Assembly (NCBI GenBank): GCA_946965045.2
Contig: OX337229.1
Coordinates: forward strand, 3,658,001 to 3,722,000
DNA length: 64,000 bases
Source: Epithemia pelagica
Lineage: Eukaryota > Protista > Bacillariophyta
Direction: 5' to 3'
Shown here one piece after another: positions 11,525 through 39,318 of this stretch. The notes under the pieces were generated by a model. That model was given only the letters and a program-made list of their open reading frames with translations. It was not told where the DNA came from and searched no databases. A program made the translations under genes and the position numbers. The stretch's first letter is position 1. Each line of letters opens with the position of its first letter.

Positions 11525-14485
11525 ATGTCGTATGATTACGATGCCTTGGTGTCCAAAGCACTCGACTTTCGTCATCGCGCCATGGGTGCTACAGCGGTCG
11601 ATGACAGTGAGGAGAAGATGGATCTCAGTGGAGATGATGAACCGGAGAAAACGACCAGGATGGATGCTTTGCAAGGAGCCATGACCACGTTTGATGAGCT
11701 GTCGCAACATTGTCCCATGACACCTCGTCTTTGGATTCTATACGGTGCAACTGCGTTTCAGTTTTGTCAAGAATTGGTACTTCAAAATGATGCTATTGCT
11801 CAAGAGCAAGAACGTCCTCCATCACATCAAGATCCGACGTCCACCGCCAATAGTATGGAAACTCAAATACAAATTCTGCAGTTGGGTCTGCAGGAATTTC
11901 CAGGTTCTCTCCTTCTTCATCTCAGATATGTGTACGTGTTACAATGGTTGCGAAGGTTGACTCAATCACTTCCACAACCAGAGGGACAGGAATTGAATAT
12001 TGCATTCGAAAGAGCCATTGAATTAGTTGGTTCTGGTTCTTTTTCTGACGATGGATCATTGGTGGTATCCCACTTCTACACTCCTCTGGCCAAACTTTAT
12101 GCGTCTCAGAAAAGGGGAGATGATCTGTTCCGTCTCCTAGTCCGTGACCAGGCCAGGCGTCCAGTTCCGAATGATGAGGTTGTTTGGTTTTATCAAAAAC
12201 AGTGTAAAACCGAAGGTATATCTTTGTCCTCCCTGGGCAAGCCAGATGATCAAGTGGACCATAGCCGGCGCTTTGTAGCAAAGCTGTACAATGGAATTAT
12301 TCAGTTACAGCATTACGAAGCAGAAATCCAGTCGATATTGCATGCTAATCAGTTGTTGCCGCCATGGAATCTTATCCCAGACAATCACAATGAAGACGGA
12401 GAAACGGAAACGAATGGTGAAGATGAATTCTGGAAAGTCGTGGCAGATCGAGCAGATACATCTCCTACATTTGGAATGGGGCACGGTGGAGTTGATCTAG
12501 CAGAAAGTTTTGTCTCGCTGGCGAGAGCTCTACACAATATCCCCGAGTCGTTGAGCAGTGTAGATGACGAAATCAATGAAGACGCTGTCTGGCAACAAAT
12601 GGTTGGGGATGCGACCAAATTGTGTCTTTCAGTATATGAACGAGGTGTCGCAGAATGTCCCACAGTCGAACTAATCTGGTTGTCCTACCTGGATTACCTT
12701 GAGCTTAGGGTTGCATCACACCATAAAGAGAGCGGTGGTGACGGGGTCCAACTGTCATCATCAGAACAGTTAGTGTCCGTCGCGCAACGTGCTTGTAGAA
12801 ACTGCCCCTACAGTCTCGTCTTGGCTGAGCGACAACTCCACATTCAAGGCTTCTTGGCAGACAACAATTTTGTGATCTTGGATCCGGATAAGCTCATGAC
12901 TGAAATGGTAAAACCAGCTGTCAGTTCGAAGTTTCTACCTTCGGAGCATGCCACGGGGAAGCTTTACCTTGCTGTTTTGCGGATTATTCAACGCCGAATT
13001 TTTTCACTGGTCGTCTCGGAGGAAGCTGATTTGGACGCCTTTGATATTGCATTGGACCCATCAAAACGACATAAGCTTAAGCTCAACAACAGGACATTAC
13101 CACATGACGTGTGGACTGAAATTCAAGACCTTTGTCAGGATTGGATAGATTTGAGTAGCACAATGGAAGAAGAGTTGGCCAAATCGAATAACAAAGTATC
13201 GGCAACGACGCGTTCTGTCTTGTTCGAGCAAAGAGCGGCGTCCATGCAACATGTCATACAACCAGTGTTGCATTCTTCCTGCGTGCCAAGGACGACAGTT
13301 TCTGATGATACTGTCGACGATGACATTTTGCGGTTTTTACAGAAGGCTGTTAAGCTTCAGAATCCATGCCATCCTGATACACAGTTATCCTATATTCGTC
13401 ATTACTTCCTTGGAAAGGTGCCACCTACCAACGCTGTTGACGTGGTCATTCGACTATGCAATGTCCGATTCCTATTCCACAGCGCGGTGAGTGCAACTGC
13501 GAACATGAACAATACCAATTCGTTGTTCATTCGTGACCACCACACTGCATTCCGACAGCTAGCCGATGAGTGGATGCAGTTTGAAGACTTTTTTGGATCA
13601 CAAAAAAGTTCTTTAGAAGCAAAGAAAGTGATTCAGAAGAAACTCGGGAAATTTCATGCCGATGCAGACCGAGGTAAGAAATCATCCGGCAAACTAGTCA
13701 CAAGTAGTGTTAACGTCCATACAAAAGTGGAAAAGCAGTTCAGTTCTAAGAAAGCGGAAATGACATTGCCAGAAGATAACCCTTCAGAGGTGGAGGTTTC
13801 CAGGGAAGGAATCACTGCAGACGTTACCACTGACATTATCGAACAACATCGGCCTGCTAAGAAAGCTCGCGTATCTCTTGGGAATCAAATAAGAGAAGCC
13901 GAGATCGATGGTAAGCATGTTGAAAGTGGTTTGACTTCAATTGCGGAAGATTCAAAATTTTCCGTTGATTTGAAAACAGTCAATGTCGTCAAGGTGGGAA
14001 ACCTCGTATTTCCCGCTCATCCTTTCACAGTTCGCGTATCTAATCTCGCAGAGGGAGTCCAAGATATGGACTTGGTCGATCTTTTCCAATCATCGAAAAC
14101 CGGGTGTGGGCGTTTGGTGCATGCACGAGTTGTCCGAGAAAAGAAAGGAAAATCGAAAGGGTGGGCTTTGGTACAGTTCGAGGAGAGAGATGGAGTGGAC
14201 AAAGCCTTGGAATTGGACGGGAGAGTGGGACTTCACGAACGAATAATCTCTGTGCAAAGATCGCACACTCCTGCTGTCCCAAGTATCGTTCCTCCTGGCA
14301 TGCATCGCGTGAAGCCACAAGGACAGGGCAAATTCACAAAACGCAACGAGAAAAAGAAAACTATAAAGCATGAAAACCATGTAGTCTCTCTTCCGAATGA
14401 GGAGTCGACTGGAGATCAAAGGAAACAACAGAACTTTGCGACACTAGGTTTAATTCCACGCGGCATCCGGAAGTCGCGCAATTAA
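11525..14485 (+). CDS. SART3/Prp24-like U4/U6 recycling factor (HAT repeats + RRM)
   Basis: HAT-type segments (YERGVAECPTVELIWLSYLDYL, RACRNCPYS), a C-terminal RRM (TVRVSNL...KSKGWALVQF) and an LIPR-type tail. Confidence 0.8.
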   Translation: MSYDYDALVSKALDFRHRAMGATAVDDSEEKMDLSGDDEPEKTTRMDALQGAMTTFDELSQHCPMTPRLWILYGATAFQFCQELVLQNDAIAQEQERPPSHQDPTSTANSMETQIQILQLGLQEFPGSLLLHLRYVYVLQWLRRLTQSLPQPEGQELNIAFERAIELVGSGSFSDDGSLVVSHFYTPLAKLYASQKRGDDLFRLLVRDQARRPVPNDEVVWFYQKQCKTEGISLSSLGKPDDQVDHSRRFVAKLYNGIIQLQHYEAEIQSILHANQLLPPWNLIPDNHNEDGETETNGEDEFWKVVADRADTSPTFGMGHGGVDLAESFVSLARALHNIPESLSSVDDEINEDAVWQQMVGDATKLCLSVYERGVAECPTVELIWLSYLDYLELRVASHHKESGGDGVQLSSSEQLVSVAQRACRNCPYSLVLAERQLHIQGFLADNNFVILDPDKLMTEMVKPAVSSKFLPSEHATGKLYLAVLRIIQRRIFSLVVSEEADLDAFDIALDPSKRHKLKLNNRTLPHDVWTEIQDLCQDWIDLSSTMEEELAKSNNKVSATTRSVLFEQRAASMQHVIQPVLHSSCVPRTTVSDDTVDDDILRFLQKAVKLQNPCHPDTQLSYIRHYFLGKVPPTNAVDVVIRLCNVRFLFHSAVSATANMNNTNSLFIRDHHTAFRQLADEWMQFEDFFGSQKSSLEAKKVIQKKLGKFHADADRGKKSSGKLVTSSVNVHTKVEKQFSSKKAEMTLPEDNPSEVEVSREGITADVTTDIIEQHRPAKKARVSLGNQIREAEIDGKHVESGLTSIAEDSKFSVDLKTVNVVKVGNLVFPAHPFTVRVSNLAEGVQDMDLVDLFQSSKTGCGRLVHARVVREKKGKSKGWALVQFEERDGVDKALELDGRVGLHERIISVQRSHTPAVPSIVPPGMHRVKPQGQGKFTKRNEKKKTIKHENHVVSLPNEESTGDQRKQQNFATLGLIPRGIRKSRN

Positions 14486-14594: not shown

Positions 14595-17500
14595 TCAACC
14601 TCCACCGCGACCTTGGATTGCAGCCTGTGGAAAAAGCATTTGAGTTATCAGAAGTGACGATTTATACTCTATCAAGCGACCTCAGGACTCACCAGCAATC
14701 CGCCCCTTCCACCCCCACCACCTCCATCTCCTCCACCTCGTCCTTGAATGGCAGCCTTTAACACCATATAAAGTGAGAAACAGATCTCTGGGTTTAGAAT
14801 ACTAAAAAAACGAAGACGAAAATAAACTCACGAGAAGGCCACCACGTCCTCCGCCTCCGCCATCACCTCCATCTCCGCCCCTTCCTCTACCTCTTCCACG
14901 GGCGCCCGAAATGGCATCTGGAAAACACATAAACAAGATGAATTGAGTACCAATGTGTGTCCGATTTGCTGGCGTGAAGTTTCTCTAGTAGTAAGTATCT
15001 TACCAAGGAGGCCTCCGCGGCCACCCCCTCGCCCACCTCTGCCTTTACCTTGGATGGCATCTGTATTAGTCACAATAACAGTAAGTAAAAGATCTACTTT
15101 TCAGCAAAATGACCACAAAATGCGTAGCTTACCGAGCAAGCCTCCGCGACCACCGGAATCGCGGCCACGACCTCGGCCCCCACTGATCGCATCTGCGTAA
15201 TCAAAAGTGCATTTCAAGGCGAAAACCTGGGTTAGGTAAAGAAATGGAATCTCCTGCAAGTAAAGTTTCTTACTTACCAAGCAAGCCGCCACGGCCACCA
15301 CGCCCCCCGGGAGGTCCTGTCGGTGCTGCTTCAGCCGCAGGTGCCTCTTCCTCCTTCGGTTTCATCTTCTCCTCGACTTCCTTCTTCAGGTCTTCCACCT
15401 TCTTCAGTTTCCTGGAGCGTTCGGGTCGCTGAACACCAAGTTTTGCGAAGAGATCCGTGTTCTTGCCGTGCAGCTCGGAAAGCATTCCTTCCAGCAACTC
15501 AATTGTCTTCTCGATACGAGTGTCCTTCGAACCGCTATCCTTCATGCGTTTTCTGATGAATGCAAAGAATTCGTTTGCAGCTTCATACACTTCGTCGGCC
15601 AAACCAGCCTCGACAGAACTACGGATATCCTCAGCGTCACCACCTGCTTTCTTTTTGCCCGACACCTGCATACCTGATCGCTGGGCGAAGTCTAAAGTGG
15701 AAAGCTTCAGTTCATTAATAGCATCCGTGAAGTTGGCAACCTCCTTCTTTGTGTCAGCGTCAGTCATATTATCGCCCTTATCAATCACAACCTCGAGCCA
15801 TTTCATCACGTGGTTCTCCATACGATCCATGGCTTCATCCATGGCCTCACAACTTCCATTGGCTTTCGACACTTGCAGCAATTTGCCTTTGTAATGCTTC
15901 TTCAGAAGATCCGCACGCTCGTTCGCTTTCTTCTCTCTGGCTAATTCTAATGCTTCTTGCATTGCCTTGGCTCCTGGGTCATCCGCGTCGGCTTTCTTTA
16001 CGTCCGATACTTCGAACTCTGCTTCGTCCGTATAGCCATAATCTCCATCGTAGTCAATAATTTTATCGGCTTTGATCGGACACTGTTTTCCCAGAAGGGG
16101 GCATCCCTGGTGGTTCTCTGGTGGGCCATACTGCTCTATATGTCTCTCATAGGGTGCAAGGTTCTCCTTGAAATTGTTTTTCATCATCTGGTACCAGGTC
16201 CATTTTCGCTCCGTCATTTTCTCAGATTTGTTCTTCTCCCACTTTGGTCCAAGTGGCTTTAAGTGGTGGTACAGCGCGCGCCGCTCTGTTAATGTCAAGC
16301 CGGTGACTCGCATGTTCTCCAGTGTCGACGGATGCATTCGTTCCAAGTCGTCAGGGTTTATTCGGAGACATTGTAGAACGTTTGTACGCTTGAACTTCTT
16401 TGCAATCGCCTTTGGCAAGAACTTTCCGTTTGGTGAGGGGTTGTTGGTGAGATCGGCTTCGCTCATGTGACGAATCTTGACAGGCATGTGTCGCCTTATT
16501 TTCTTAACAGCTTCGAGATTACCCGGAGCGTTGTCGTCTTCCCATTTTTTCTCAAGTCTGTCTTGTTCTGCTTGATACTCTTCCGTTAACATTAACGCAG
16601 TGTTGTACCTTTCCATCTGTTGCTCCAGTTTGAAGTACTCTTCACGAAGCCTGTTTTGTTCCTCCTTATCCGCAACTGTCACATCACTTCCGCCGATTTC
16701 TCCCATTCTCTTGGCTATCTCCTCCACCTTCAACTTAGCTTCAGAATAGTCGATATCCTCGGCAATCGCAACACCTGCTTGAGCAAGTTGCTTCTCCAGT
16801 TTCTTTTGTCGTTTTTCGGCTTCTTGTAGTCTGTTCAGAAGAAGCTCCATGTCACCTGCTTGCAACTTGTTCAGAAGCGCTTTCATATCCATGTCCCCTA
16901 GAGCAGATACAGCTCGAGCGGCATCAGCCAGTTTGGAATCGACGACCTCTTGGCCATCTGAGATTTCCGAATACTTCTTCGATGGATCCATGGCTTGACC
17001 TGGGTTCCCAGCTGGCACTTCAACCTCAAACATACCCTCAGGCTTCGCCTCTCCACCACTGCCGTTGGCATGATTCAATACAAAACTAGATGCTTCTCCT
17101 TTCTCCTGTTTTTCTTTTACCATCTTTTCAAGCTCTTCTTTGCTCTGACCCGTGGCATTTGCTATCTCATCCAACGACATGAGTTTTTTCACACCTTTGC
17201 CCCCCTCACCGTCACCAACGCTGACGGTGAATTTGTCTTCGGGACTAGCCTTTAACTCTGCCGCTGTCGCAACAGGAGGTGCTGGTGCACTATCATCAGA
17301 CACCACGACAACGTAGGCCGCTCCACCAGGTTGTGTAGGAGTAGCTGCAGCTTGAGCAGGGCCCAAAGCTGGAGTCACCGGAGAAGGTGAACCGAGCACC
17401 GCAGCAACTATCGTTGCATCCACGCCGTCTTGTTCCATCTTATGATTTACAGCATCTTGCGGCATGCCCATTTTCAACATTTTTCGATACTTGGAGGCCG

Positions 17501-20500
17501 TTTCTTCTTGCTCACCTGACAACTGAACTGTTTGGTTGGTCTGGGGTACGGGTTCCGCTGAGGCAGGTGCACTTTGACTACTTCCAAGTACAGCATCTAT
17601 GATAGAAGAACTCACTCCCTCTTGTGTCATTTTTTGCTTGACAGCATCCTCTGGAAGTCCCATCTTAAGCATTTTGCGAAACCTAAATGCGACCTCTTCG
17701 TCTTCAGGCGACAATGTTGATGGTTTTGACATAACAAGCATTGACGTCAGTGAAGAAGAAGAAAACGTACGTCCTTGACCTCGTTCTGCTGGCGCGTTAA
17801 AAACTGCCGACATAACTTTTTCGCTGACACCCTCACTGGCCATCTTGTGCTTCACAGCATCAGGGGGGAGACCCATGCCCAACATTTTCCGGAATCTAAC
17901 TGCCACAACTTCTTCATCTTCCGTGAGAGAGGATTGGTCCTTGGGCGAGGTTGTAGAAGAAGAATCTGGCGCACGAGAAGATTGCGACTCTTCGTGAAAA
18001 ACTGCTGTGATTATTTTGGAGTCGATTCCTTCAACGACCATCTTGTGTTTGACCGCGTCGCCCGGAAGGCCCATACTCAACATCTTGCGGAATCTACTAG
18101 CCGTTGCCTCTTCCTCGTCAGATAATTTCGCTGGGTCACTGGTTTCAGTCGTCGATGGTGAAGGAGCAACTACTTCACCACCAACGACTGCTGTGATGAC
18201 TCTCTGACTGAGTCCCTCGGCTACCATCTTCTGGCGGACGGCATCTTCTGGGAGACCCATTTTGAGCATCTTTCGAAACTTTCCTGCTGCCTCCTCCTCC
18301 TCACCCGACAGTGTGGATGCTGCAGATGTTGCAGCGTTTGCGGCAGTCCCGGAGACTTCGCGATTTAGAACGGAATGAATGATAAGAGGACCGACTCCAT
18401 CCTGGACCATCTTATGCTTAACTGCGTCATCAGGTAATCCCATCGTGAGCATCTTTCTGTATGTCTCCGCAATTTTCTCATCTTCTGCAGATAGGTTAGA
18501 TACAGGGCCAACAGGACCGTTGTCTTGAGCGACAGGGCTCTTTCCCGCTACTGAGGCGGAACCAGATCCTGGTTTGCGGACCCGCCGGACGAGTTTGCCA
18601 TCCGCCCGTCGATAAACCTCTCCTTCTTGTGCTTGTGATGAGGTCGAGGTCCCTTCCCGTGTCTTTCTGATCCGTCGAACTTTCTTACCATCAGCACGGA
18701 TTACAATTTCACCTTCCGGGGTCGATTTGATGACACGGTCTCCAGCAACGGTAGCCGCTTCATTAACAGAACCATCAGAACCCAGCGCTCTAGATTTTGG
18801 CCTTCCATCGAGGAGGGCAGACAAAGTCCGGCCACCATCGGACTGGCCAAGAGACTTCTTTGGAGAAGATTCATGAGAAGACGGGAGTGTGACAGAGCTG
18901 GACGACGAAGCAGCTCTTCCTGATGGTGTCCGCCGAACCCGTCGGACCTTTTTGCCATCTGGTCGAATGTAAATTTCACCGTCTTGCGTGGGGGTCGATC
19001 CAGACACGGACGCGCCTCCATATTTGGGTGCTCCTGGGTTATTTCCAGGCTTGTCCAAGAATCCTGCCAGATCACCTGCGGGCGATTGTGCTGTCCCGCT
19101 AGTCGTCCGTCGAACTCGACGAACCTTTTTACCATTTTTGTTGATATACACCTCACCCTCCTCCGGTTTCTTTGACGACGATGATGAAGGAGTGGAAGTT
19201 GCACCAGTGACGGTGGCGGCTCCGCTCAACTTGGGACCATCACTAGATGACTTGGACAGGAAGGATCCCAAACCAGCAGATCCACCGTCGTTGTTTGCTT
19301 TGCTTGACGTTGTTCTTCTTACTCTTCTTACCTTCTTTCCGTCAGCACGAATGTATATTTCTCCCTCGCCAGCTGCACTACTATTGCTGCTTGCGTTGCG
19401 CCCGTCGCCAGCTACCGTTGCGGAACCACTCTTCTTTGACCCACCCGAGCTGCCGTTTCCCAAAAAGTTGGAAAGTGAAGATTGCTTGCCTTGAGATGGG
19501 GCGGCCTCCTTTGTCGGAGCCATTTCCCTGCTCGCCCCAGTGTCGCCCGAAGCGGATACTGAGGAGGAAGAAGACTTCCGCACGCGGCGCACTTTCTTGC
19601 CGTCTGCCCGAATATACACATCGCCTTGAGTGGCGGGGGTGGAACCGGCAACGGAAGCGCTTGCCAATCTACTTGGTTTTGTGGGGCTTCTGTCCCTACT
19701 TTCCAAGAATCCCCCTAGGCCACCCTGAGACTTTTGAGGAGAAGCAGGGCCACCCAGGCCACCCAATCCACCAAGGGACTTTTGAGGAGAAGCAGGTCGC
19801 TGTTCACCAAGTTTGGAAGACGAGTTTGACCTCGACACGGATTTGACCGGGGAGTCCATGTCTAATGAAGACGAGGTCCCTGTTAGCTTTGACCGTGAAG
19901 GAGATTTTGTTAGCTTTGATGATGATGGAATCCTTGTCATTTTCGAAGGTGATTGAGATCTCTTTGATGGTGATGAGGACCTCGATCTACCAGACCTGGC
20001 AGACTCCCCACCTACTGAATCTCCTGACATTGATCGTCTCATCATCTCCCCCCCGACGGAAGCAGACGACTTACGTACACGCCTTACTTTTTTGCCATCT
20101 TTGTTGGTATAAACGTCGCTATCCTTCGATTTGGCTGACACACCCGATGCCGAACGTCCTGAAACACTATGACTGGTTCTTCGACTTTCTCCTCCACTTT
20201 GGCGGTTAAGGAAACTCCCCAAGTCTTTCTTCTTTGATTTAGACGGCGAAGCAGGTGAAGACGGTGACGGTGCCTGTTCACTTGGTGGATTCCCGGCTTG
20301 AGAGGACTCCGAAACAAGTGCACCAACACTTCCAGAAGAAGACCGGCCAACCTTGCGAACTCGTCGGACCTTCTTTCCATCGGGGCGAATGTATATTTCA
20401 CCATCCTGCTGAGAGGAATTCGAGGAAACTCGGTCTCCAGCAACAGTTGCAGAACCACTTTTCCTTGGACTAGCAGAACCCGATCCCAGAAAATTTCCAA

Positions 20501-20768
20501 GACTGCTCTTTTTCCCAGTGTCAACAGAAGCCAAGCTATTCGATGATGTGTTCTTCTTCACTCCTCTTGTTTTTTCAGCTGATTTCCCTTCCGCTGTCAA
20601 ACTTCTATCACTTGGAGTCCGCTTCACAACTTTTTTCACGCGCCGAACCTTCTTCCCGTCCGCACGGATGTATACTTCACCTTCCGGTGTGTTGCCTCCA
20701 ACCGTCGCCGCAGATGTTTGCCTGGCACCAGAGGATTTCGTGTCAAGAAATGATCCCAGATCAGACAT
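14595..20768 (-). CDS. Giant multi-repeat protein, probably actin-associated (exons 20768-15278, 15192-15133, 15060-15004, 14917-14832, 14755-14693, 14624-14595)
   Basis: Nine G(E/D)xYIRxDGKKVRRV(R/K) repeats and six (F/Y)RKMLxMG(L/M)PxDAVxxKMxx(E/D)G repeats (CCDC53/WASHC3 C-terminal-like). A coiled-coil/helical region follows, then five GGRGGLL(D/A)AI(S/Q)G repeats built from GT-AG mini-exons, ending in TGA at 14595-14597. Confidence 0.85.
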
Positions 20769-21568
20769 GACTGGAAACCGATTGTACAAGAATCAAGTTT
20801 GACCAAGCAGTGAATGATACGAATACGCGGTGGTCAGCTTTCCGCTAAGATCCAGAAACCTGACGAATGAGCAAAGGTTTCGAAAGACCTTCGTAGACTG
20901 GTGACCCGAACCTCTTAACACGGATACAGCCCAGTTACAGAGAAGTGTTGTCGAAAATGCCTGACAATGGACGAGGGGTCTCCGTTGGCATTCACCTCTT
21001 GCTCTCCAGTCTTTTCCTCCAGCAAATCCGAGTTGAAAGATGAGATAAGAGTTTAAGAGACCGCTCTAATGACACAACAAAAACCCGAAAAGGTCATTTT
21101 ATAGTCGAATTCCATTTGCTCCACAGTTCAATTGGAGAAGAATGGAATCCTCGGGGTTGATCTTGGTCTTACGCGAGGCGAATGGGAGCTCCTTGGGAGC
21201 AAAGGAGAAGGCAACTTTGAAATTTAAATATATGCGCCACGACCGAAACATCACAAATGAATCACGGGCAACTCCTACCCTCTCTATTGTAGACCTAGAG
21301 ACCTAGCTCTAGAGATGCGATGACTCGAAGATAAACGTGCGCTTGAAAGACAAACACTTGTTCAATAGTCGTAGCAAACTCTAATGGAATTAGACCCATT
21401 CCGCTGCTCCAAGTGCATTAACAGACAGACCATACATTCATCGATTCATGATTCTAATAGCCATGCTGTCAAACTCATGACGAAGCACAAAGACAGAATA
21501 ATATACGCTAGCGCTAGCTATACAATGTTTCTCGTAAAACCGAGAAGTACGTCTTCCACATTTTGGTT

Positions 21569-33245: not shown

Positions 33246-36200
33246 TTACGAACGTTGACTGCGGGAAGAAGTTAACCGCTTGCGCAATGCACCGAAACTG
33301 CGCCCTGAACGGTTGGATCCCGTTCCTGTTGACGGGCTCACAGAAGGGACATTGTTTTCTCGATTTTCAATGCTGCTTTGGATCGAATTTGCATACTTCG
33401 TATTCGATGGGTCAACTTGATGGGGTGCCCCACCAGAGGACGACTCTCGATGATTACGCGAGCTGCTGGATCGATGCGTGGAAGCTCTACTGGATACAGA
33501 GCTGGGAGTTGCTTGGTCCATTCGACCTCCTTCGTTGGAAGAGAGGCTTCCGCCAGTAAAGAAGGGATGTTCAAGAACCTCACGCATTGACGGAATTCTC
33601 TGATCAGGGTCATGATGAAGTAGTTTTTTGAGAAGATCTTGCGCAACATCGTTCTCAGGAAAAGACTTCATCGCTTTGCGAACACTCTGCCCATCCCACA
33701 ACCCGATTTTACAAACCTCACTCGTGGTCATAGCACGCTTGCCTCGGCAAGCGTAAGGGGCGAGGGGCAAACCAGCGATTGCTTCATAGACTACAACACC
33801 ATACGCCCAAATATCATACGTAGCCTCTGCCTTGATTGATTTCACACTGGCAATCGTGCTTGAAGATCCAATAGGAGCTCTTCGCTTCTCGACAACAATT
33901 GACTCAGGAGGATGATAAAATCCACGGTTGGGTTCAGTTTCTGCGCCCATCGGAATCGCTCCTCCTACCCCAAGAAGTTTCCAGCGGCTTCCAAATTTAC
34001 CGATATTGTGCGTACCAAAATCACCGTGAATGATACCGTGTTCATGCATGTGGAGCAACGAAATGCCAATTCGTTTCAGCGCTTTTGCAGGGAATACTTT
34101 TCCTGATTTACGAAGGTCAAGCATAAGATTTTCTGCAGTTGTGTCAGCACCCTCCATAGTAATACAGTATCCGGGCTCAGCCATTGCCTCGGAATATGCT
34201 GCATGTTGGACAGTGTGATGGACGCTGATGATTGCTGGAACGTAATGCCGTGAAAGGTGGAAATCCTTACGAACCTTGAGCTCCCGTTCAACAACATCAG
34301 ATTTTGAGGTAAGTTTGGCGATGACTTGTTGACCCTTCTCCTTCCTAATGTGCCTCAACCTGTCTTCAATTGTTTGTTGCGATCTACTCGTCAAGGTCGA
34401 CCTGATACTATGTCGCGAAAGAGCTGAAACGTGCGACTGGTCATCGAAGTCCTCAATATAATCATTGTCGCCACCATCTTTCTTCTCCTCGTGGAGAACA
34501 GTGAATTGACCGGAATGTTGAGGCGGAGGGTCATATCGCAATGCATAAAATATCTGTGTATCACTGACGGGGTTGGTATATGCCGGTCTTTGGTTCACAA
34601 CCTCTAACGTATTAAACAGCCGAAGCATCACACGCATCTCATGCTTGCATACTGGGGTTGCAGACGCCAGAGCAATCCTGCCGTCGGGGCCTTCAACATG
34701 AGCCAATGCGAGTACTTGAGGCTGAGTACACGACTGCAACACCTTTGTCACAACTTGGTGGTATAAGTCTTCTGTGTTGGAAACAACATGATTCCAAGAG
34801 TAGTGGTGAGGAACAAGCTGAGCGCGGACTTTCTCCGAGAGATCAATGGGAAGGTCTCGTTTGAGCAAGCTATGGACAATGAAATGAGAATGTTCGTTTT
34901 CAGTTGCTACTTGTATCGGAAGCAAGCCGGTCTTCCGGTCAACAGAAGTAGCAAGCTCAGGGGCATGATTCAACAAACCCATTATGGTTCTGTCGTCTGC
35001 ATTGTGTTTGAAGGAAAGAAACAAAGGACTATGCCCTTCGCCGTTCAACACCCCTGCTCCCTCAGGATACTGCATCAGAACAGCATTGATGACTGCAGAC
35101 CGACATTGGCACTTAATCGCGATCGCAAGCGGTAGGTCTCCAAACATATCTGTTCGTGATACAGACCCTGTAAAGCATTGAAGCAGTGTCTTGACAACAA
35201 CTGGGTCAACAGCCTCACCGCAACGAAGCAACAAGTGCAGCGGCAGGTCACCATTTTCGTCCGTTCGCTTTGCCGATGCAAAATTTTCGGCCAATAGAGC
35301 AGTAATCACACCAATGGATGCATGATTGCTGCAGGCGATGTGGAGTGGAAGCCCACCGCCAGAATCTGCAGGGGGTCGGTACACCATTGTGTAAGCTCCT
35401 TCAGGAGACTTAGCAAGCAAGAACTTGATAGCATCTATTGCATCGTAGGTTGCAGCCACATGGATTGGGAGCCTTCCCATCTTGTCCGTCTCATTGATGC
35501 CCTCTTTGTATGCACTGTGAATAATCTCAAGAGCGGCCAAGTTATCGTGGGCAGAGGCATGGTGAATCGGCAAAGCCCCCATGTTGTCCCTATGGATCAA
35601 TGCTTTGGGATAGAGAACGAGAACCATGTCAACCAACAGTGTCCAAGCCCCATTATGTCTGGCAATCTTGTGTAAAACAAGTTCGCCTGTCTTGAGATCA
35701 GGGGTTTCCGCCAGTTCAGGATTTTTGTCTAAGATGCTCTCAACCATGGCCCAATTTTCATTTTGTATCTCTTGAACCAATGCACCCAAAGCAGATTCGT
35801 TTGTCGAAGGTACAAGTTCTCTGGACTCAACGATGTTTGAAACCGCAACATGTCGCGTCTTCTCTGGCGAAATAGAAGGGCGCGTTGGCACTGCCTCTTC
35901 ATGACGTTTCACCATTGCACTCACGATTTCGTTGCTTCGTCGAACCTTCGGCTCACGGTGAACAGGATGAGTGGGATCAACAGCCACAGTATCCGGGCTT
36001 GTGGAAGTGGTAGCTGACCTGTTTCGCCATGCAAATTGAATCAACGTTGCAGCATATTTACGAGTAATGAAGGCATCAGAAACGAACAACCTTGCTGTGG
36101 ATCCCCGCCACCATCGTTGAATTGTTTGCGCCGCAGCGATGAATCGAAGGTTGAACGAGATTCTCACGGCAAGTCGCATTCGGAACAAGCTCTGGATGAG

Positions 36201-39200
36201 GACAGCTGCATAGCGCATCAAATAAAATTTATCGCGACAAATCTTTCCTCTCACAACTTTCTGTATGGCTGCTGCGGCGCCGTGGAATCTTTCTGATCGC
36301 ATGGCCTCAATTCGGTCGAATGCTTCTCGCCGCAAAAAGACTTTAGTGCGTCCAAGTTGAAGGCCTGCAACAGCACATCTTGATGGGAAATCAAGTGCTA
36401 AGAATTCTTCTTCGGTTTCTGGGCGTCCCACGTCGTGATCTCGTCTTCTTTCTCGTAAAGCAACAGCAGGATCTTTCGTCCTCTTATGCTTACCGTCCGG
36501 AGTCATAACGGAACTCTCCACAACCAGATTAAACGGCGGTGCGTAAGGCCCAGAATGCAATTTTGGCTTTGTCGTATTCTTTGAACGAGCATGTTTCAAG
36601 AATGCGGCTGCGGCTGAGGATTGCCGCCCTGAATATTCAGCTTGAAGAAGTGCAAGCATTAACTGATGGTCCGCATACCATAGGTCAAAGGCAATCTTGG
36701 AAATGAGTCGTTTCAAGTCCGTAACTTGCTCCATATTATTTCTCGGCGAGAATGGAGGACTTTGAGGAGTGACATCAGTGCTGTCCCCTAGAATATGGTA
36801 CCGAGCAAGAAAAACGTCATGGGGATAACGCGTAGGATACCCAGCACGACTTACTCTGACGGCTTCTAGAACACCACCGCATCGGAGCTGGTCAACAACA
36901 TTCTTGGGTTCAAAGTAGTCTGGGACAAGCTCATCATTCGGTTTGAGGCAACGGATATAGTGTGGTACGGTCTTATCGATACGTGCGCGGAGCACACCCA
37001 ATTGACTTGAGAACTGAGAGCTCACGGACTTCGTTGCAACTGTTCCGCGTCCTGCACGATCTTCCGTACGAACAAAGCGTCGGATCTGGGCAATCAGCGA
37101 AAATTCAGCAGAATTGAGAAGCTCTGAAGACGCGGCTGGAAGCTGGTCTTTGTTCTTTTCAATCCATGAGTCTGTGTTATACTCAACATCACCGGCGTAG
37201 TGTTCAATACTAAAGAGATGATCCACGCGTTGCTTCGAGCTCGCTTTGAACCTGGCGTGTTTGTCACAACGTCCGTACAAGTAGCGTGTGTACTTCTCGT
37301 CTGTACTACGAGGCAGAATGCATTGTTCATCGAGCAAGGGCAAAATGCCTTCATGTTTCTTATCGATAAGGTCAAGCACATCTTGATTGTCTGGAAACGA
37401 AATGAATTTCCACATGATTCCCTCCTTTTCATACTCTTGTTGCTCTAGTTTGAACACGTACTTGTTGAATTGCTGCTGGAGAGCTTCGTTGGTAAAGTTA
37501 ATACAAAGCTGTTCAAAACCATTTGACCCGAATGTTTCGAAGCCAAAAATATCCAATACTCCAATTGAGGCAGTAGAATTCGGCGCATCGCCTTGATCAA
37601 TTCCAGCATTGACTTTTTCCACAATGAATTCGAAGGCAGCGCCGTAAATCGATTTAATGAACGCCTCGGCAGCTTTCGTCGCTTCCTCGACATTGAGAAC
37701 TTTGTGAACAACTTCATCACCTGCAAGGATCACTCTAGCAGTCAGTGCAGAAGCCAATCCTTCAAACCCGATTCCCAGGAGCTTTGCGCAGGACAACGAG
37801 GCCTCATCTTCGTTCAGAGTACATGATTCTCCATCCTTAGAAGGCGTGAAGGTCATGTTTCCTGCAAACAAAATTCCAGTTACGAGTCTCATCAAATCTT
37901 GTACTTCGTTCTCTGAAAAACCAATAGTAAGCTATGGAAGAAGCGAATTAGTTGGTTGGTAGAGTCAGAAGAGTACAAGACAAAGTGGCACTTACCATTG
38001 CCGAAAGCATATCATTGTGCTGGTTCGCATCATCTACACCATCTCGTCGATTGTATGTCCCACTCTGGTTCAGCAGCTTGAAATCTTTAACTCCCTTGCC
38101 CCGAAGTCCATAGGCACGACGTTCCGGGTCACTGCAACCAGCCAAAAATTGGTAAAACACGTGGTAGTTTCTTTCGCCGGTTCCGATATGGATAAGACGA
38201 ACTTTTTCCAGTAGGTAGGTCTCAATCTGTGCCCCCGACAACTTTCCTTGACGCGTAAACCGTATATCGATATACTTCCCGAAACGAGAAGAGTTGTCAT
38301 TCCGAAGGGTCCGAGCATTGCCAAATGCTTCTAAAATCGGGTTACTTTGTAAAACTTGTTGCTCGGTGCTCACGTGAGAAACTCTGGGAGATGAGGCATG
38401 TCGCTCCATTGTTACGCGCTCAATCTCTGCACGTCGTTTCGAAAGCATAGCAAAATAGTTAAGCACGATTTTGGTCGTTACTGTTTTTCCAGCCCCACTT
38501 TCACCTGAAACTAAAATGCTCTGGTCTGTGGGCGACTCTCGCTGGGTAACTGCAATTGCGCTGTCACCCCTGCGCATGCTTTTTGGGTTTTTCACCAGAT
38601 CGCTGTTTTCCATGCCCCTCATCATTGCACGGTATGCATCATCAGCCGCTTGGTAAACATGCGGTGGCAATCGTCGATGTTGCTGAGGCATTCGATGACC
38701 TCTCGCGCGTCTGTTCTTAAAAGGTGTAGTAAAAGACGTCGTTGTTGCTGCACTTGTCTCTTCTCCTTGAGTGCAATATTTCTCCATCATGTCACTTCCA
38801 TATATCTCCATTCGTTTGAAAGGATTAACGGCAATGAGAATAGGTCCAGTTGCTGTATAAATAATGTTGGCGTCATATCGGAGTCGGAGCGCATGAAGAA
38901 TTGCTGGCTCATGAAGATGAGTGAGTCCAATAAGGTCGTCAACACCGCCAACAATACCAGACTCTGAATGAGTACTTGGGCTCGCAATTACACCTGCTTC
39001 AGGGTCTTCCCCTTGTAGATGAAAAGAGTTCGGTAGGTTTCTCAACTTAACATCGTCATGATCAGCTGTCTTTAATTGTTCGGGATCAACAGTTACGACG
39101 ACTTCAAATTCTTCTTCCTCTGAGAAGTATCCTGGGCTTGTCTTGCCTTTCGATGATGGAGGTGGAAGGGTTTTCTCGATGTTGCGATCGTCATTGAGGG

Positions 39201-39318
39201 TAAGGTTGATCAGCTCCACCCCAGAGACAACAATCGATTCCTTTTTCGTAATCACTGCAGGAACCCATCCCCAGTGCGAGTCATCCTTACGGAGCCACAC
39301 GTGCGCACCCAGCTCCAT
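33246..39318 (-). CDS. Myosin with 4 IQ motifs, ankyrin repeats and a C-terminal kinase-like domain (exons 39318-37996, 37931-33246)
   Basis: P-loop GESGAGKT, switch I NDNSSRFGKY, switch II DIFGFE, HYIRCLKPN, four IQxxxR motifs, ankyrin repeats (LPIHHA, LPIHVA, LPLHIA, LPLHLL) and kinase subdomains (HGD..N, YHPPE, DIWAYG, HPFF). Confidence 0.92.

What the first reader, a model, noticed from the sequence alone, without database searches (positions are those of the whole stretch)
15278..20768. About 1,900-aa protein built from three unrelated repeat systems: candidate diatom actin scaffold
Seen: nine copies of a tripartite unit (LGxFL ... SA(T/S)VAG ... GE(V/I)YIRxDGKKVRRVRK) in S/G-rich linkers at about 18550-20770. 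Six KMLxMGLPxDAVxxKM helical repeats lie at about 17400-18480, followed by a conserved-looking Cys-containing helical region and the WH2-like tail. Established: the KMLxMG.P motif resembles the CCDC53/WASHC3 C-terminus and recurs in stramenopile formins. I do not recognise the DGKKVRR repeat as a named domain. Inference: a multivalent cytoskeletal or membrane scaffold, possibly relevant to actin-myosin gliding; an unusual myosin lies 12 kb away.
Basis: partly seen in the sequence, partly recalled or inferred. Interest (0 to 1): 0.7.

Follow-up and report, generated by a model that had tools for sequence, protein, structure and literature searches.

The report
Diatom repeat scaffold with unknown core domain
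This is a real, spliced diatom gene for a 1,928-residue protein that joins three kinds of short repeats to a very conserved domain of unknown fold shared with water moulds; its parts point to actin and membranes, but no function has been tested.

Summary
One minus-strand gene (20768..14595, six exons, 1,928 codons) encodes nine GE(I/V)YIRxDGKKVRR cores, eight of them in the full LGxFL / SATVAG / core unit. It also encodes six CCDC53-C-terminal-like units (Pfam PF10152, E 4.9e-47) and five RGGLL(D/A)AI helices, each split by an intron.

Residues 1300-1600 are the most conserved part and define an uncharacterised stramenopile family (415 representative clusters). Named members are raphid pennate diatoms and oomycetes. 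The globular half folds at pLDDT 96.6, yet has no relative in the PDB (best Z 4.6, best Foldseek E 1.4) and no Pfam model.

Oomycete kin carry FYVE or PDZ-PH-C2 domains where the diatom has its basic repeat array. Most members end in the same helix motif, which matches only the first half of WH2. A CCDC53-like triplet sits directly before an FH2 domain in one metagenomic formin.

Best reading (about 0.45): a membrane-tethered, multivalent actin-assembly scaffold. A role in gliding is untested, and the nearby myosin is not evidence.

The scan separately noted the mini-exon tail of this gene (s1-233047). It also noted similar motifs on formins elsewhere in this genome.

The parts
15278..20768 (-). 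Exon 1 of the gene (aa 1-1830 plus the first base of a split GAT codon); ATG at 20768
   Evidence: ORF list and translation. GT donor directly after 15278. The N-terminus aligns from residue 1 with the annotated Epithemia clementina protein P0003.
18573..20768 (-). N-terminal basic, Ser/Gly-rich array (aa 1-732). It holds 8 tripartite units (LGxFL, SATVAG, GE(I/V)YIRxDGKKVRR(V/I)(R/K)(K/R)) plus a ninth core. The D/N of each core lies at 20660, 20381, 20099, 19604, 19343, 19136, 18959, 18692 and 18602.
   Evidence: Regex maps. Net charge +75 over the first 750 aa, 21% Ser, no transmembrane segment. Third-codon identity of 31% shows old repeats. No Pfam hit. The motif is kept in orthologs that are only about 30% identical across this region.
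17361..18515 (-). Six CCDC53-C-terminal-like helical units (aa 752-1136), each about 60 aa with the core (Y/F)RKMLxMGLPxDAVxxKMxxEG(V/I)
   Evidence: Pfam PF10152 at E 4.9e-47, 160.5 bits, 6 stretches, profile positions 90-145/147. Alignment A3 with units of P0163 and P0338.
16872..17360 (-). Poorly conserved acidic linker (aa 1137-1299)
   Evidence: Outside most BLAST alignments to distant relatives. Net charge -11.
15969..16871 (-). Conserved family-defining module (aa 1300-1600). Helical hairpins span aa 1300-1395 (16584-16871) and a globular all-helical subdomain spans aa 1396-1598 (15975-16583).
   Evidence: Identity is 43-72% to 26 modules of diatom orthologs, two-module paralogs and an oomycete (A1). 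A profile search found 415 clusters at E<=1e-3 and 179 at E<=1e-30. AlphaFold2 gave pLDDT 84 for the whole module and 96.6 with pTM 0.91 for the globular part. No PDB or ESM Atlas fold match. No Pfam family and no PDB sequence match.
16080..16334 (-). Four residues conserved in at least 90% of 79 diverse modules: His1479 (16332-16334), His1543 (16140-16142), Cys1556 (16101-16103) and Cys1563 (16080-16082). They are candidate metal (Zn) ligands.
   Evidence: Near-invariant columns H84, H148, C161 and C168 of alignment A2, mapped to the window. Metal binding is inference only.
15369..15968 (-). Helical extension of the module (aa 1601-1800). It is shared with orthologs and with oomycete PDZ-PH-C2-type kin, but not with the two-module paralogs.
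   Evidence: BLAST alignments reach aa 1789-1830 in P0066 and P0084 but stop at about aa 1594 in two-module paralogs.
14595..15368 (-). RG-rich tail with five GGLL(D/A)AI(S/Q)G helices. It comprises the end of exon 1 (15279-15368), mini-exons 15133-15192, 15004-15060, 14832-14917, 14693-14755 and 14595-14624, and the stop at 14595-14597. The introns are 15193-15277, 15061-15132, 14918-15003, 14756-14831 and 14625-14692.
   Evidence: Exon-by-exon translation, GT..AG ends and split GAT codons. RNA-library contigs of a close relative join LL to DAI across these introns. Tails of annotated orthologs are colinear. Pfam WH2 PF02205 hits ortholog tails on profile positions 1-14 of 28 only.

Best explanation
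The gene encodes a cytosolic, multivalent scaffold of a stramenopile-specific protein family, and it most likely couples a membrane or cortical site to actin assembly.

Shown:
- The family is defined by a roughly 300-aa all-helical module, here followed by a 200-aa helical extension.
- In most members the protein ends in one to eight short amphipathic helices of the type (G/D)-L-(L/M/F)-x-A-I-x-x-(R/K/G). These match the actin-binding helix half of WH2.
- The diatom orthologs add six CCDC53-C-terminal-like units. The same unit is found directly before an FH2 domain in one metagenomic formin.
- The diatom orthologs also add a strongly basic N-terminal array of nine conserved hairpin-like cores.

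Inferred:
- The tail helices hold several actin monomers, or dock back onto the module as a formin DAD does on DID. Either way they could seed or feed filaments in an organism group reported to lack Arp2/3, the WASP family and profilin.
- The CCDC53-like units are adaptor domains shared with formins, binding the same unknown partner.
- The DGKKVRR array sits where oomycete relatives have FYVE or PDZ-PH-C2 domains, so it may tether the protein to acidic membranes or along filaments.
- The module is a regulatory or oligomerising core, possibly stapled by a His2Cys2 metal site.
For: Gene model and expression: (spliced RNA contigs of a near relative).
CCDC53-like units: Pfam E 4.9e-47.
The same unit before FH2, in place of FH1, in L017: FH2 207.8 bits and CCDC53 102.2 bits.
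Tail helix: Pfam WH2 above its gathering score in the ortholog P0051 (32.2 vs 23.1 bits, 7 stretches) and the oomycete-type P0354 (24.6 bits), on profile positions 1-14. A tail-like motif lies after the module in 265 of 357 collected family proteins. It is present in diatom orthologs, two-module paralogs and both oomycete architectures, even where the RG-rich context is absent.
Membrane-binding partner domains in kin: FYVE (P0198, P0219, P0289, P0327) and PDZ, PH and C2 (P0066, P0338, P0357).
Basic array: +75 net charge, no transmembrane segment, motif under purifying selection.
Literature: Arp2/3 and the WASP family are absent in Bacillariophyta (PMC3298513). Many diatoms lack profilin and Arp2/3 (PMC11420354).
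Against: - No experiment and no structure links any part to actin.
- The tail lacks the LKKV half that defines WH2, and each single helix scores only a few bits.
- The window's own tail could not be scored as one piece, because the exons were searched apart and gave no hit.
- The module has no detectable relative of known function.
- CCDC53-like units also occur with LRR and TPR proteins, so they are generic adaptors rather than actin-specific.
- RG/RGG runs and KKVRRVRK clusters are also typical of RNA-binding and nuclear proteins.
- The organism of the formin locus L017 is unknown.
Confidence: 0.45

Rival explanations
1. It is an endomembrane or trafficking scaffold that does not touch actin. 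The module is a protein-interaction or lipid-related domain recruited by FYVE, PH or C2 domains in oomycetes and by the basic array in diatoms. The tail helices bind another partner or fold back on the module for autoinhibition only.
For: FYVE and PDZ-PH-C2 partner domains in kin. The true CCDC53 belongs to an endosomal complex (PMC3298513). CCDC53-like units also join LRR and TPR proteins. Tight co-occurrence of module and tail fits an intramolecular lock.
Against: The tail helix reaches the WH2 threshold in two relatives. The CCDC53-like unit sits directly before FH2 in L017. Diatoms are reported to lack the WASH and Arp2/3 machinery.
Confidence: 0.2
2. It is an RNA-binding or condensate-forming protein, possibly nuclear. 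The RG/RGG tail and Ser-rich basic repeats would bind RNA or drive phase separation, and the KKVRRVRK clusters would act as nuclear localisation signals.
For: The tail is rich in RGG/RG. The N-terminal 750 aa are 21% Ser with +75 net charge and nine KKVRR(V/I)(R/K)(K/R) clusters.
Against: In FYVE-type oomycete kin and in diatom paralogs the tail keeps the amphipathic helix but not the RG runs, so the conserved element is the helix. No RNA-binding domain was found. The partner domains in kin are membrane binders.
Confidence: 0.1
3. The conserved module is an enzyme or metal-dependent catalytic domain, and the repeats merely position it.
For: Conservation is very high (about 35-65% between diatoms and oomycetes). 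Residues conserved in at least 90% of modules, four of them invariant, include His, His, Cys, Cys, Glu and several Arg.
Against: The fold is an all-helical bundle without a recognisable catalytic scaffold. No structural or sequence link to any enzyme was found. The His/Cys pattern fits a structural Zn site equally well.
Confidence: 0.1

Closest known systems
WASHC3 / CCDC53 (Pfam PF10152), subunit of the endosomal WASH complex
   Same: Six units match the C-terminal helical part of the family profile (positions about 90-145 of 147) with a total E of 4.9e-47.
   Different: The N-terminal coiled-coil part of the profile is not matched. There are six tandem copies inside a 1,928-aa protein instead of one copy at the end of a protein of about 190 aa. 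Diatoms are reported to lack the WASH and Arp2/3 system (PMC3298513). It shares a domain with CCDC53 and is not an ortholog.
WH2-repeat actin regulators (Spire, Cordon-bleu, VopL/VopF) and the WH2-like DAD tail of formins
   Same: It has a C-terminal array of short amphipathic helices of the LLxxI type behind a short Pro/Gly-rich stretch. The Pfam WH2 profile is hit on its helix half in relatives. Some kin carry a FYVE domain, and by recall Spire does too.
   Different: There is no LKKV-type second half, and RG-rich linkers take its place. There is no KIND domain or other domain of those families, and no test of actin binding. The helix followed by a basic cluster in oomycete kin resembles a formin DAD as much as it resembles WH2. 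That resemblance rests on recall and was not tested.
Stramenopile formins with CCDC53-like units in place of FH1 (metagenomic locus L017; AI notes s1-239088 and s1-238820 for this genome)
   Same: The same CCDC53-like unit is used in tandem. According to the earlier notes, WH2-helix-like arrays also sit on this diatom's formins.
   Different: This protein has no FH2 domain. Its conserved core is the unknown module.
Oomycete 'FYVE-type domain-containing' proteins (e.g. Phytophthora infestans PITG_06898) and PDZ-PH-C2 proteins (e.g. PITG_00263), all uncharacterised
   Same: They carry the same module at roughly 35-55% identity and the same kind of C-terminal helix motif. The PDZ-PH-C2 type also has one CCDC53-like unit and the helical extension.
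   Different: Their N-termini are lipid- or peptide-binding domains rather than the DGKKVRR array. No paper in the searched library names these loci.

Membership tests
CCDC53 / WASHC3 (PF10152) | C-terminal helical domain of the family profile | tested here: met
   Six stretches, 160.5 bits against a cut-off of 24.6, on profile positions about 90-145/147.
CCDC53 / WASHC3 (PF10152) | N-terminal coiled-coil region that builds the WASH complex (profile positions 1 to about 85) | tested here: not met
   The best stretch covers profile positions 90-145 only, and the units of relatives cover 62-147. Per-stretch coordinates of the other five units were not printed. The flanking sequence between units is Ser/Ala/Pro-rich linker.
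CCDC53 / WASHC3 (PF10152) | Presence of the partner subunits (WASH, FAM21, SWIP, strumpellin) and Arp2/3 in the organism | not tested
   Only one 64-kb window was available. Kollmar et al. 2012 (PMC3298513) report Arp2/3 and WASP-family proteins absent in Bacillariophyta.
WH2 motif (PF02205) | N-terminal amphipathic helix (LLxxI type) | tested here: met
   The ortholog tail P0051 scores 32.2 bits (cut-off 23.1, 7 stretches), P0354 scores 24.6 bits and P0003 scores 20.5 bits, always on profile positions 1-14/28. The window's five motifs are colinear with these. The window's own exons searched apart gave no hit, because each motif is split by an intron.
WH2 motif (PF02205) | LKKV-type motif a few residues after the helix | tested here: not met
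   The helices are followed by G/R-rich sequence. Profile positions 15-28 are never aligned.
WH2 motif (PF02205) | Binding of monomeric actin | not testable with these tools
   This needs biochemistry or a complex prediction.
Formins | FH2 domain | tested here: not met
   There is no PF02181 hit in the 1,832-aa exon-1 product at E<=1. The weak Foldseek rows to FH2 structures have E 2-6 and TM 0.12-0.16.
Unnamed stramenopile module family (defined here by alignments A1 and A2) | The roughly 300-aa module with the conserved PNGK, KFKRTN, HPS, TERRA and YGPP motifs and the His2Cys2 pattern | tested here: met
   The window protein is row 1 of A1 and A2 and carries all invariant and near-invariant residues. 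It lies inside a clade with 98% SH-aLRT support together with Epithemia, Entomoneis, Amphora, Mayamaea and Fistulifera.
Unnamed stramenopile module family (defined here by alignments A1 and A2) | C-terminal amphipathic helix motif(s) after the module | tested here: met
   There are five copies in the window. The motif is present in 265 of 357 family proteins, many of the rest being truncated gene calls.

The most novel reading that the evidence does not exclude
The module plus helix tail could be a previously unrecognised, stramenopile-specific actin-assembly machine with a new fold. Such a machine would work beside formins, and in diatoms it would take over tasks of the lost Arp2/3, WASP and profilin system. 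The CCDC53-like unit, which replaces FH1 in some formins, could be the monomer- or adaptor-recruiting element of that system. The DGKKVRR array, seen so far only in raphid pennate diatoms, could be the lineage-specific tether that places the machine on the raphe-associated actin bundles used for gliding.
Probability: 0.12. Interest if true: 0.85.

Novelty: new variant of a known kind. Interest (0 to 1): 0.62.

Why it matters
Diatoms build prominent actin bundles under the raphe, around the girdle and at the silica deposition vesicle. They are nevertheless reported to lack Arp2/3, WASP-family proteins and profilin, so which proteins nucleate, feed and anchor these filaments is an open question.

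This gene gives a concrete, expressed candidate, and each of its separable parts can be tested on its own. It also flags a strongly conserved domain shared by diatoms and plant- and animal-pathogenic oomycetes. That domain has no Pfam model, no characterised member and no structural relative in the PDB, even though it is predicted with near-crystal confidence. That combination makes it a worthwhile target for structure determination.

Tried and rejected
- Sequence search of the C-terminal 642 aa against the PDB: nothing better than E 0.64. Profile A2 against the PDB: best E 0.43.
- Foldseek against the PDB with both models: best E 1.7 and 1.4. The FH2 rows there have TM 0.12-0.16, so I rejected a hidden FH2.
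- VIA-align wide search. For the whole module, only the generic helical hairpin (residues 38-96) matched, at Z about 9, which is within the noise range the tool states for helical proteins. For the globular part the best Z was 4.6, and none of 48,161 chains reached Z 5.
- ESM Atlas by shape: TM at most 0.31. ESM Atlas by features, for the module and for three N-terminal units: no usable hit.
- Profile of the CCDC53-like unit against the PDB: only summed weak matches to designer PPR repeats, about 4 bits per repeat. I rejected these as chance.
- Pfam on other proteins that carry DGKKVRR units (P0273, P0275, P0384): no partner domain.
- Organism names for distant family members: cluster look-ups and encoding-contig look-ups returned only metagenome or assembly accessions. 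Whether centric diatoms, Phaeodactylum or non-stramenopiles have the family therefore stays open.
- Literature: no paper holds CCDC53 together with diatom. No paper names six locus tags of family members. PF10152 appears once, in an oomycete domain-count table.
- Gene neighbourhood as evidence (the myosin at 33-39 kb): rejected as uninformative.
Full report
**Observation**

The region holds one long minus-strand ORF, 20789..15270. The first ATG is at 20768, and the annotated Epithemia clementina protein P0003 aligns from its residue 1 to this residue 1. The ORF does not end the gene. At 15278 a GT donor follows, and five mini-exons continue to a stop at 14595-14597. The mini-exons are 15133-15192, 15004-15060, 14832-14917, 14693-14755 and 14595-14624. 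All five introns are GT..AG and 68-86 nt long. The CDS totals 5,787 nt, or 1,928 codons.

I read the exons one by one by reference. I did not send the joined spliced protein to any search tool, so that step is left out. The tail was judged from the separate exons and from annotated orthologs.

Two RNA-library runs hold short contigs that are 90-99% identical to the gene, so they come from a close relative. These contigs show the following:
- A joint from 15172 to 15285 whose 21 intervening letters read LLDAIGR on the coding strand.
- Loose ends at 15147 and 14755 that read GGLLDAIQ and GRGGLL.
- A joint ending exactly at the exon-6 boundary, 14624.

The splice pattern is therefore real, and the ortholog is transcribed in nature. 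Two DNA runs hold the window nearly identically and may be its source.

**The three repeat systems**

The first system is the DGKKVRR array.
- Nine DGKKVRR cores lie at aa 37-723.
- Eight are preceded, at conserved spacing, by LGxFL and S-A-T-V-A-G motifs. The ninth has the core only.
- No shuffle of the protein yields the heptapeptide (0 of 2,000).
- The 17-aa cores are 75% identical as protein but only 31% identical at synonymous third positions. These are old repeats under purifying selection.
- The N-terminal 750 aa are 21% Ser with a net charge of +75 and no transmembrane segment.
- Pfam has nothing for this region.

The second system is six units of about 60 aa at aa 752-1136. They match the C-terminal part of Pfam CCDC53 (profile positions 90-145 of 147) at E 4.9e-47.

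The third system is five GGLL(D/A)AI helices in an RG-rich tail, each cut after LL by an intron.

Residues 1300-1600 are the most conserved stretch of the protein.
- A word search with aa 1270-1800 found 191 proteins. Diatom orthologs were 60-91% identical.
- Two-module diatom paralogs and an oomycete protein were still 43-53% identical over the core.
- A profile of 27 modules, run against 1.84 billion representative proteins, found 415 clusters at E<=1e-3 and 179 at E<=1e-30.
- Pfam has no model, and the PDB has no sequence relative.

AlphaFold2 predicts an all-helical module. The whole module scores pLDDT 84 and pTM 0.73. The globular half, aa 1396-1598, predicted with a 79-sequence alignment, scores pLDDT 96.6 and pTM 0.91.

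That confident model has no structural relative that I could find.
- Foldseek against the PDB: best E 1.4.
- VIA-align against 48,161 representative chains: best Z 4.6, and none reached Z 5.
- The ESM Atlas shape search, run on the whole-module model, gave TM at most 0.31.
- The whole-module search only picked up generic helical hairpins.

Four residues conserved in at least 90% of the 79 diverse modules are His1479, His1543, Cys1556 and Cys1563. They suggest a structural metal site. This is inference.

**The family**

Named orthologs that carry the DGKKVRR array and CCDC53-like units are all raphid pennate diatoms. They are Epithemia clementina, Entomoneis paludosa, Amphora coffeiformis, Mayamaea, Fistulifera, Nitzschia, Fragilariopsis kerguelensis and Cylindrotheca. 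One further named ortholog comes from the transcriptome labelled Tiarina, a ciliate. I take it for contamination and did not test this. The window's protein is closest to Epithemia, at 92% in the globular domain, so the organism is a related raphid diatom.

Oomycetes have two architectures.
- FYVE plus module, for example PITG_06898, sometimes mislabelled as FAB1 kinase.
- PDZ-PH-C2 plus one CCDC53-like unit, the module and the helical extension, for example PITG_00263.

These occur across Phytophthora, Pythium, Plasmopara, Albugo, Saprolegnia, Aphanomyces and Achlya.

Other architectures also exist. One pairs four CCDC53-like units and the module with TPR repeats (P0163). The diatom paralogs have two tandem modules whose N and C copies largely form separate groups in the tree, which fits an old tandem duplication. 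Many tree clades come from metagenomes without names. Whether centric diatoms or other groups have the family could not be settled.

**The tail travels with the module**

A helix motif of the type Φ-Φ-x-A-I followed by basic or Gly residues lies after the module in 265 of 357 collected family proteins. Many of the remainder are truncated gene calls. Examples are GGLLDAIKGG in diatoms, GDLFAAIKGRG and NLMAAIAARKKE in PDZ-type oomycete proteins, and PLFDAIKARRKQK in FYVE-type proteins. The conserved element is therefore the helix, not the RG runs.

Pfam WH2 is hit above its gathering score in P0051 (32.2 bits, 7 stretches) and P0354 (24.6 bits). Epithemia P0003 falls just below, at 20.5 bits. 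In every case only profile positions 1-14 of 28 are aligned. The LKKV half is absent. These are WH2-helix-like motifs and not WH2 domains.

**What the company of domains says**

A scan of metagenome contigs for the CCDC53-like unit returned 22 loci.
- Eight belong to this family.
- Five join the unit to LRR repeats.
- One, L017, has three units directly before an FH2 domain (FH2 207.8 bits), with no proline-rich FH1 between them.

It agrees with earlier AI notes on formins of this same genome (s1-239088, s1-238820), which I did not re-test on that DNA.

Two papers give context. One reports Arp2/3 and WASP-family proteins absent from Bacillariophyta (PMC3298513). The other reports that many diatoms lack profilin and Arp2/3 (PMC11420354). 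The units here therefore cannot be part of a canonical WASH complex, and a formin without FH1 makes sense where profilin is missing.

**Most likely mechanism (confidence about 0.45)**

The protein is a cytosolic scaffold with four roles, all inferred.
- The C-terminal helices engage actin monomers or the module itself.
- The CCDC53-like units bind a partner shared with formins.
- The basic N-terminal array does the job that FYVE or PDZ-PH-C2 domains do in oomycete kin, which is attachment to acidic membranes or to filaments.
- The conserved module is the regulatory or oligomerising core.

What is shown is the anatomy, the conservation, the selection on the motifs, the domain co-occurrences and the expression. 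The rivals are a trafficking scaffold without actin contact (0.2), an RG-rich RNA-binding or condensate protein (0.1) and an enzymatic module (0.1).

The gliding idea is untested. The module family exists in organisms that do not glide. The DGKKVRR array is so far seen only in raphid pennates, but the named sampling is thin. The myosin-ankyrin-kinase gene at 33246-39318 is no evidence.

**Novelty and verdict**

The gene is a member of an uncharacterised family that sits in databases as hypothetical proteins. Its CCDC53-like and WH2-helix-like parts are variants of known motifs. Its core module and the tripartite DGKKVRR unit are undescribed as far as Pfam, the PDB, the ESM Atlas and the paper library show. 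I rate it a new variant of a known kind (repeat-rich actin or membrane scaffold), with interest 0.62.

Noticed in passing
window 33246-39318 (-): Two adjacent ORFs together encode a myosin head (PF00063 in both) followed by ankyrin repeats and a protein kinase domain.
   Followed up: partly
L017:1432-3342 (+), contig MDTE01080127.1: A metagenomic formin has three CCDC53-like units and a Lys-rich stretch directly before FH2, with no proline-rich FH1. The organism is unknown.
   Followed up: partly
L016, L019, L021, L022 and L025 (+): Five metagenomic ORFs of about 750-810 aa join an N-terminal CCDC53-like unit to C-terminal leucine-rich repeats. The unit is therefore a mobile adaptor domain found in several architectures.
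   Followed up: no
P0261 (Epithemia clementina ACA910_010975, 675 aa): A second Epithemia gene repeats the first one or two tripartite units of this protein twice (60% identity). It ends in unrelated repeats and looks like a partial duplication of the gene's 5' end.
   Followed up: no
P0273 and P0274 (930 and 927 aa) and P0275 (507 aa): The DGKKVRR core, in P0273 and P0274 with the LSGF(L/F) and SVAG motifs, also occurs behind unrelated N-terminal regions without any Pfam domain. The unit is therefore not confined to this gene family.
   Followed up: partly
window 14847 (exon 4 of the tail): DNA run X4 carries a 6-nt insertion (CCTCCG on the + strand), which adds two Gly codons to the Gly/Arg run. 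Tail length is polymorphic between samples.
   Followed up: no
window about 16104-16112 (aa 1553-1555): The window protein and its closest relatives (for example Entomoneis P0005, a transcript) lack an 11-residue loop (PYATRDNPN-type) between the conserved His and Cys of the module. Most family members have this loop. Since it is missing in a transcriptome sequence too, it is not an unrecognised intron.
   Followed up: partly
window 11525-14485 (+) against 14595 (-): The neighbouring 986-aa RRM-containing gene converges on this gene. The two stop codons are only about 110 bp apart, which leaves very little room for two 3' UTRs.
   Followed up: no
P0066 (Thraustotheca clavata THRCLA_04843, 2,302 aa, partial): This protein carries two modules with PDZ, PH and C2 domains between them. 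It may be an annotation fusion of two neighbouring family genes, since other oomycete members have only one module.
   Followed up: no
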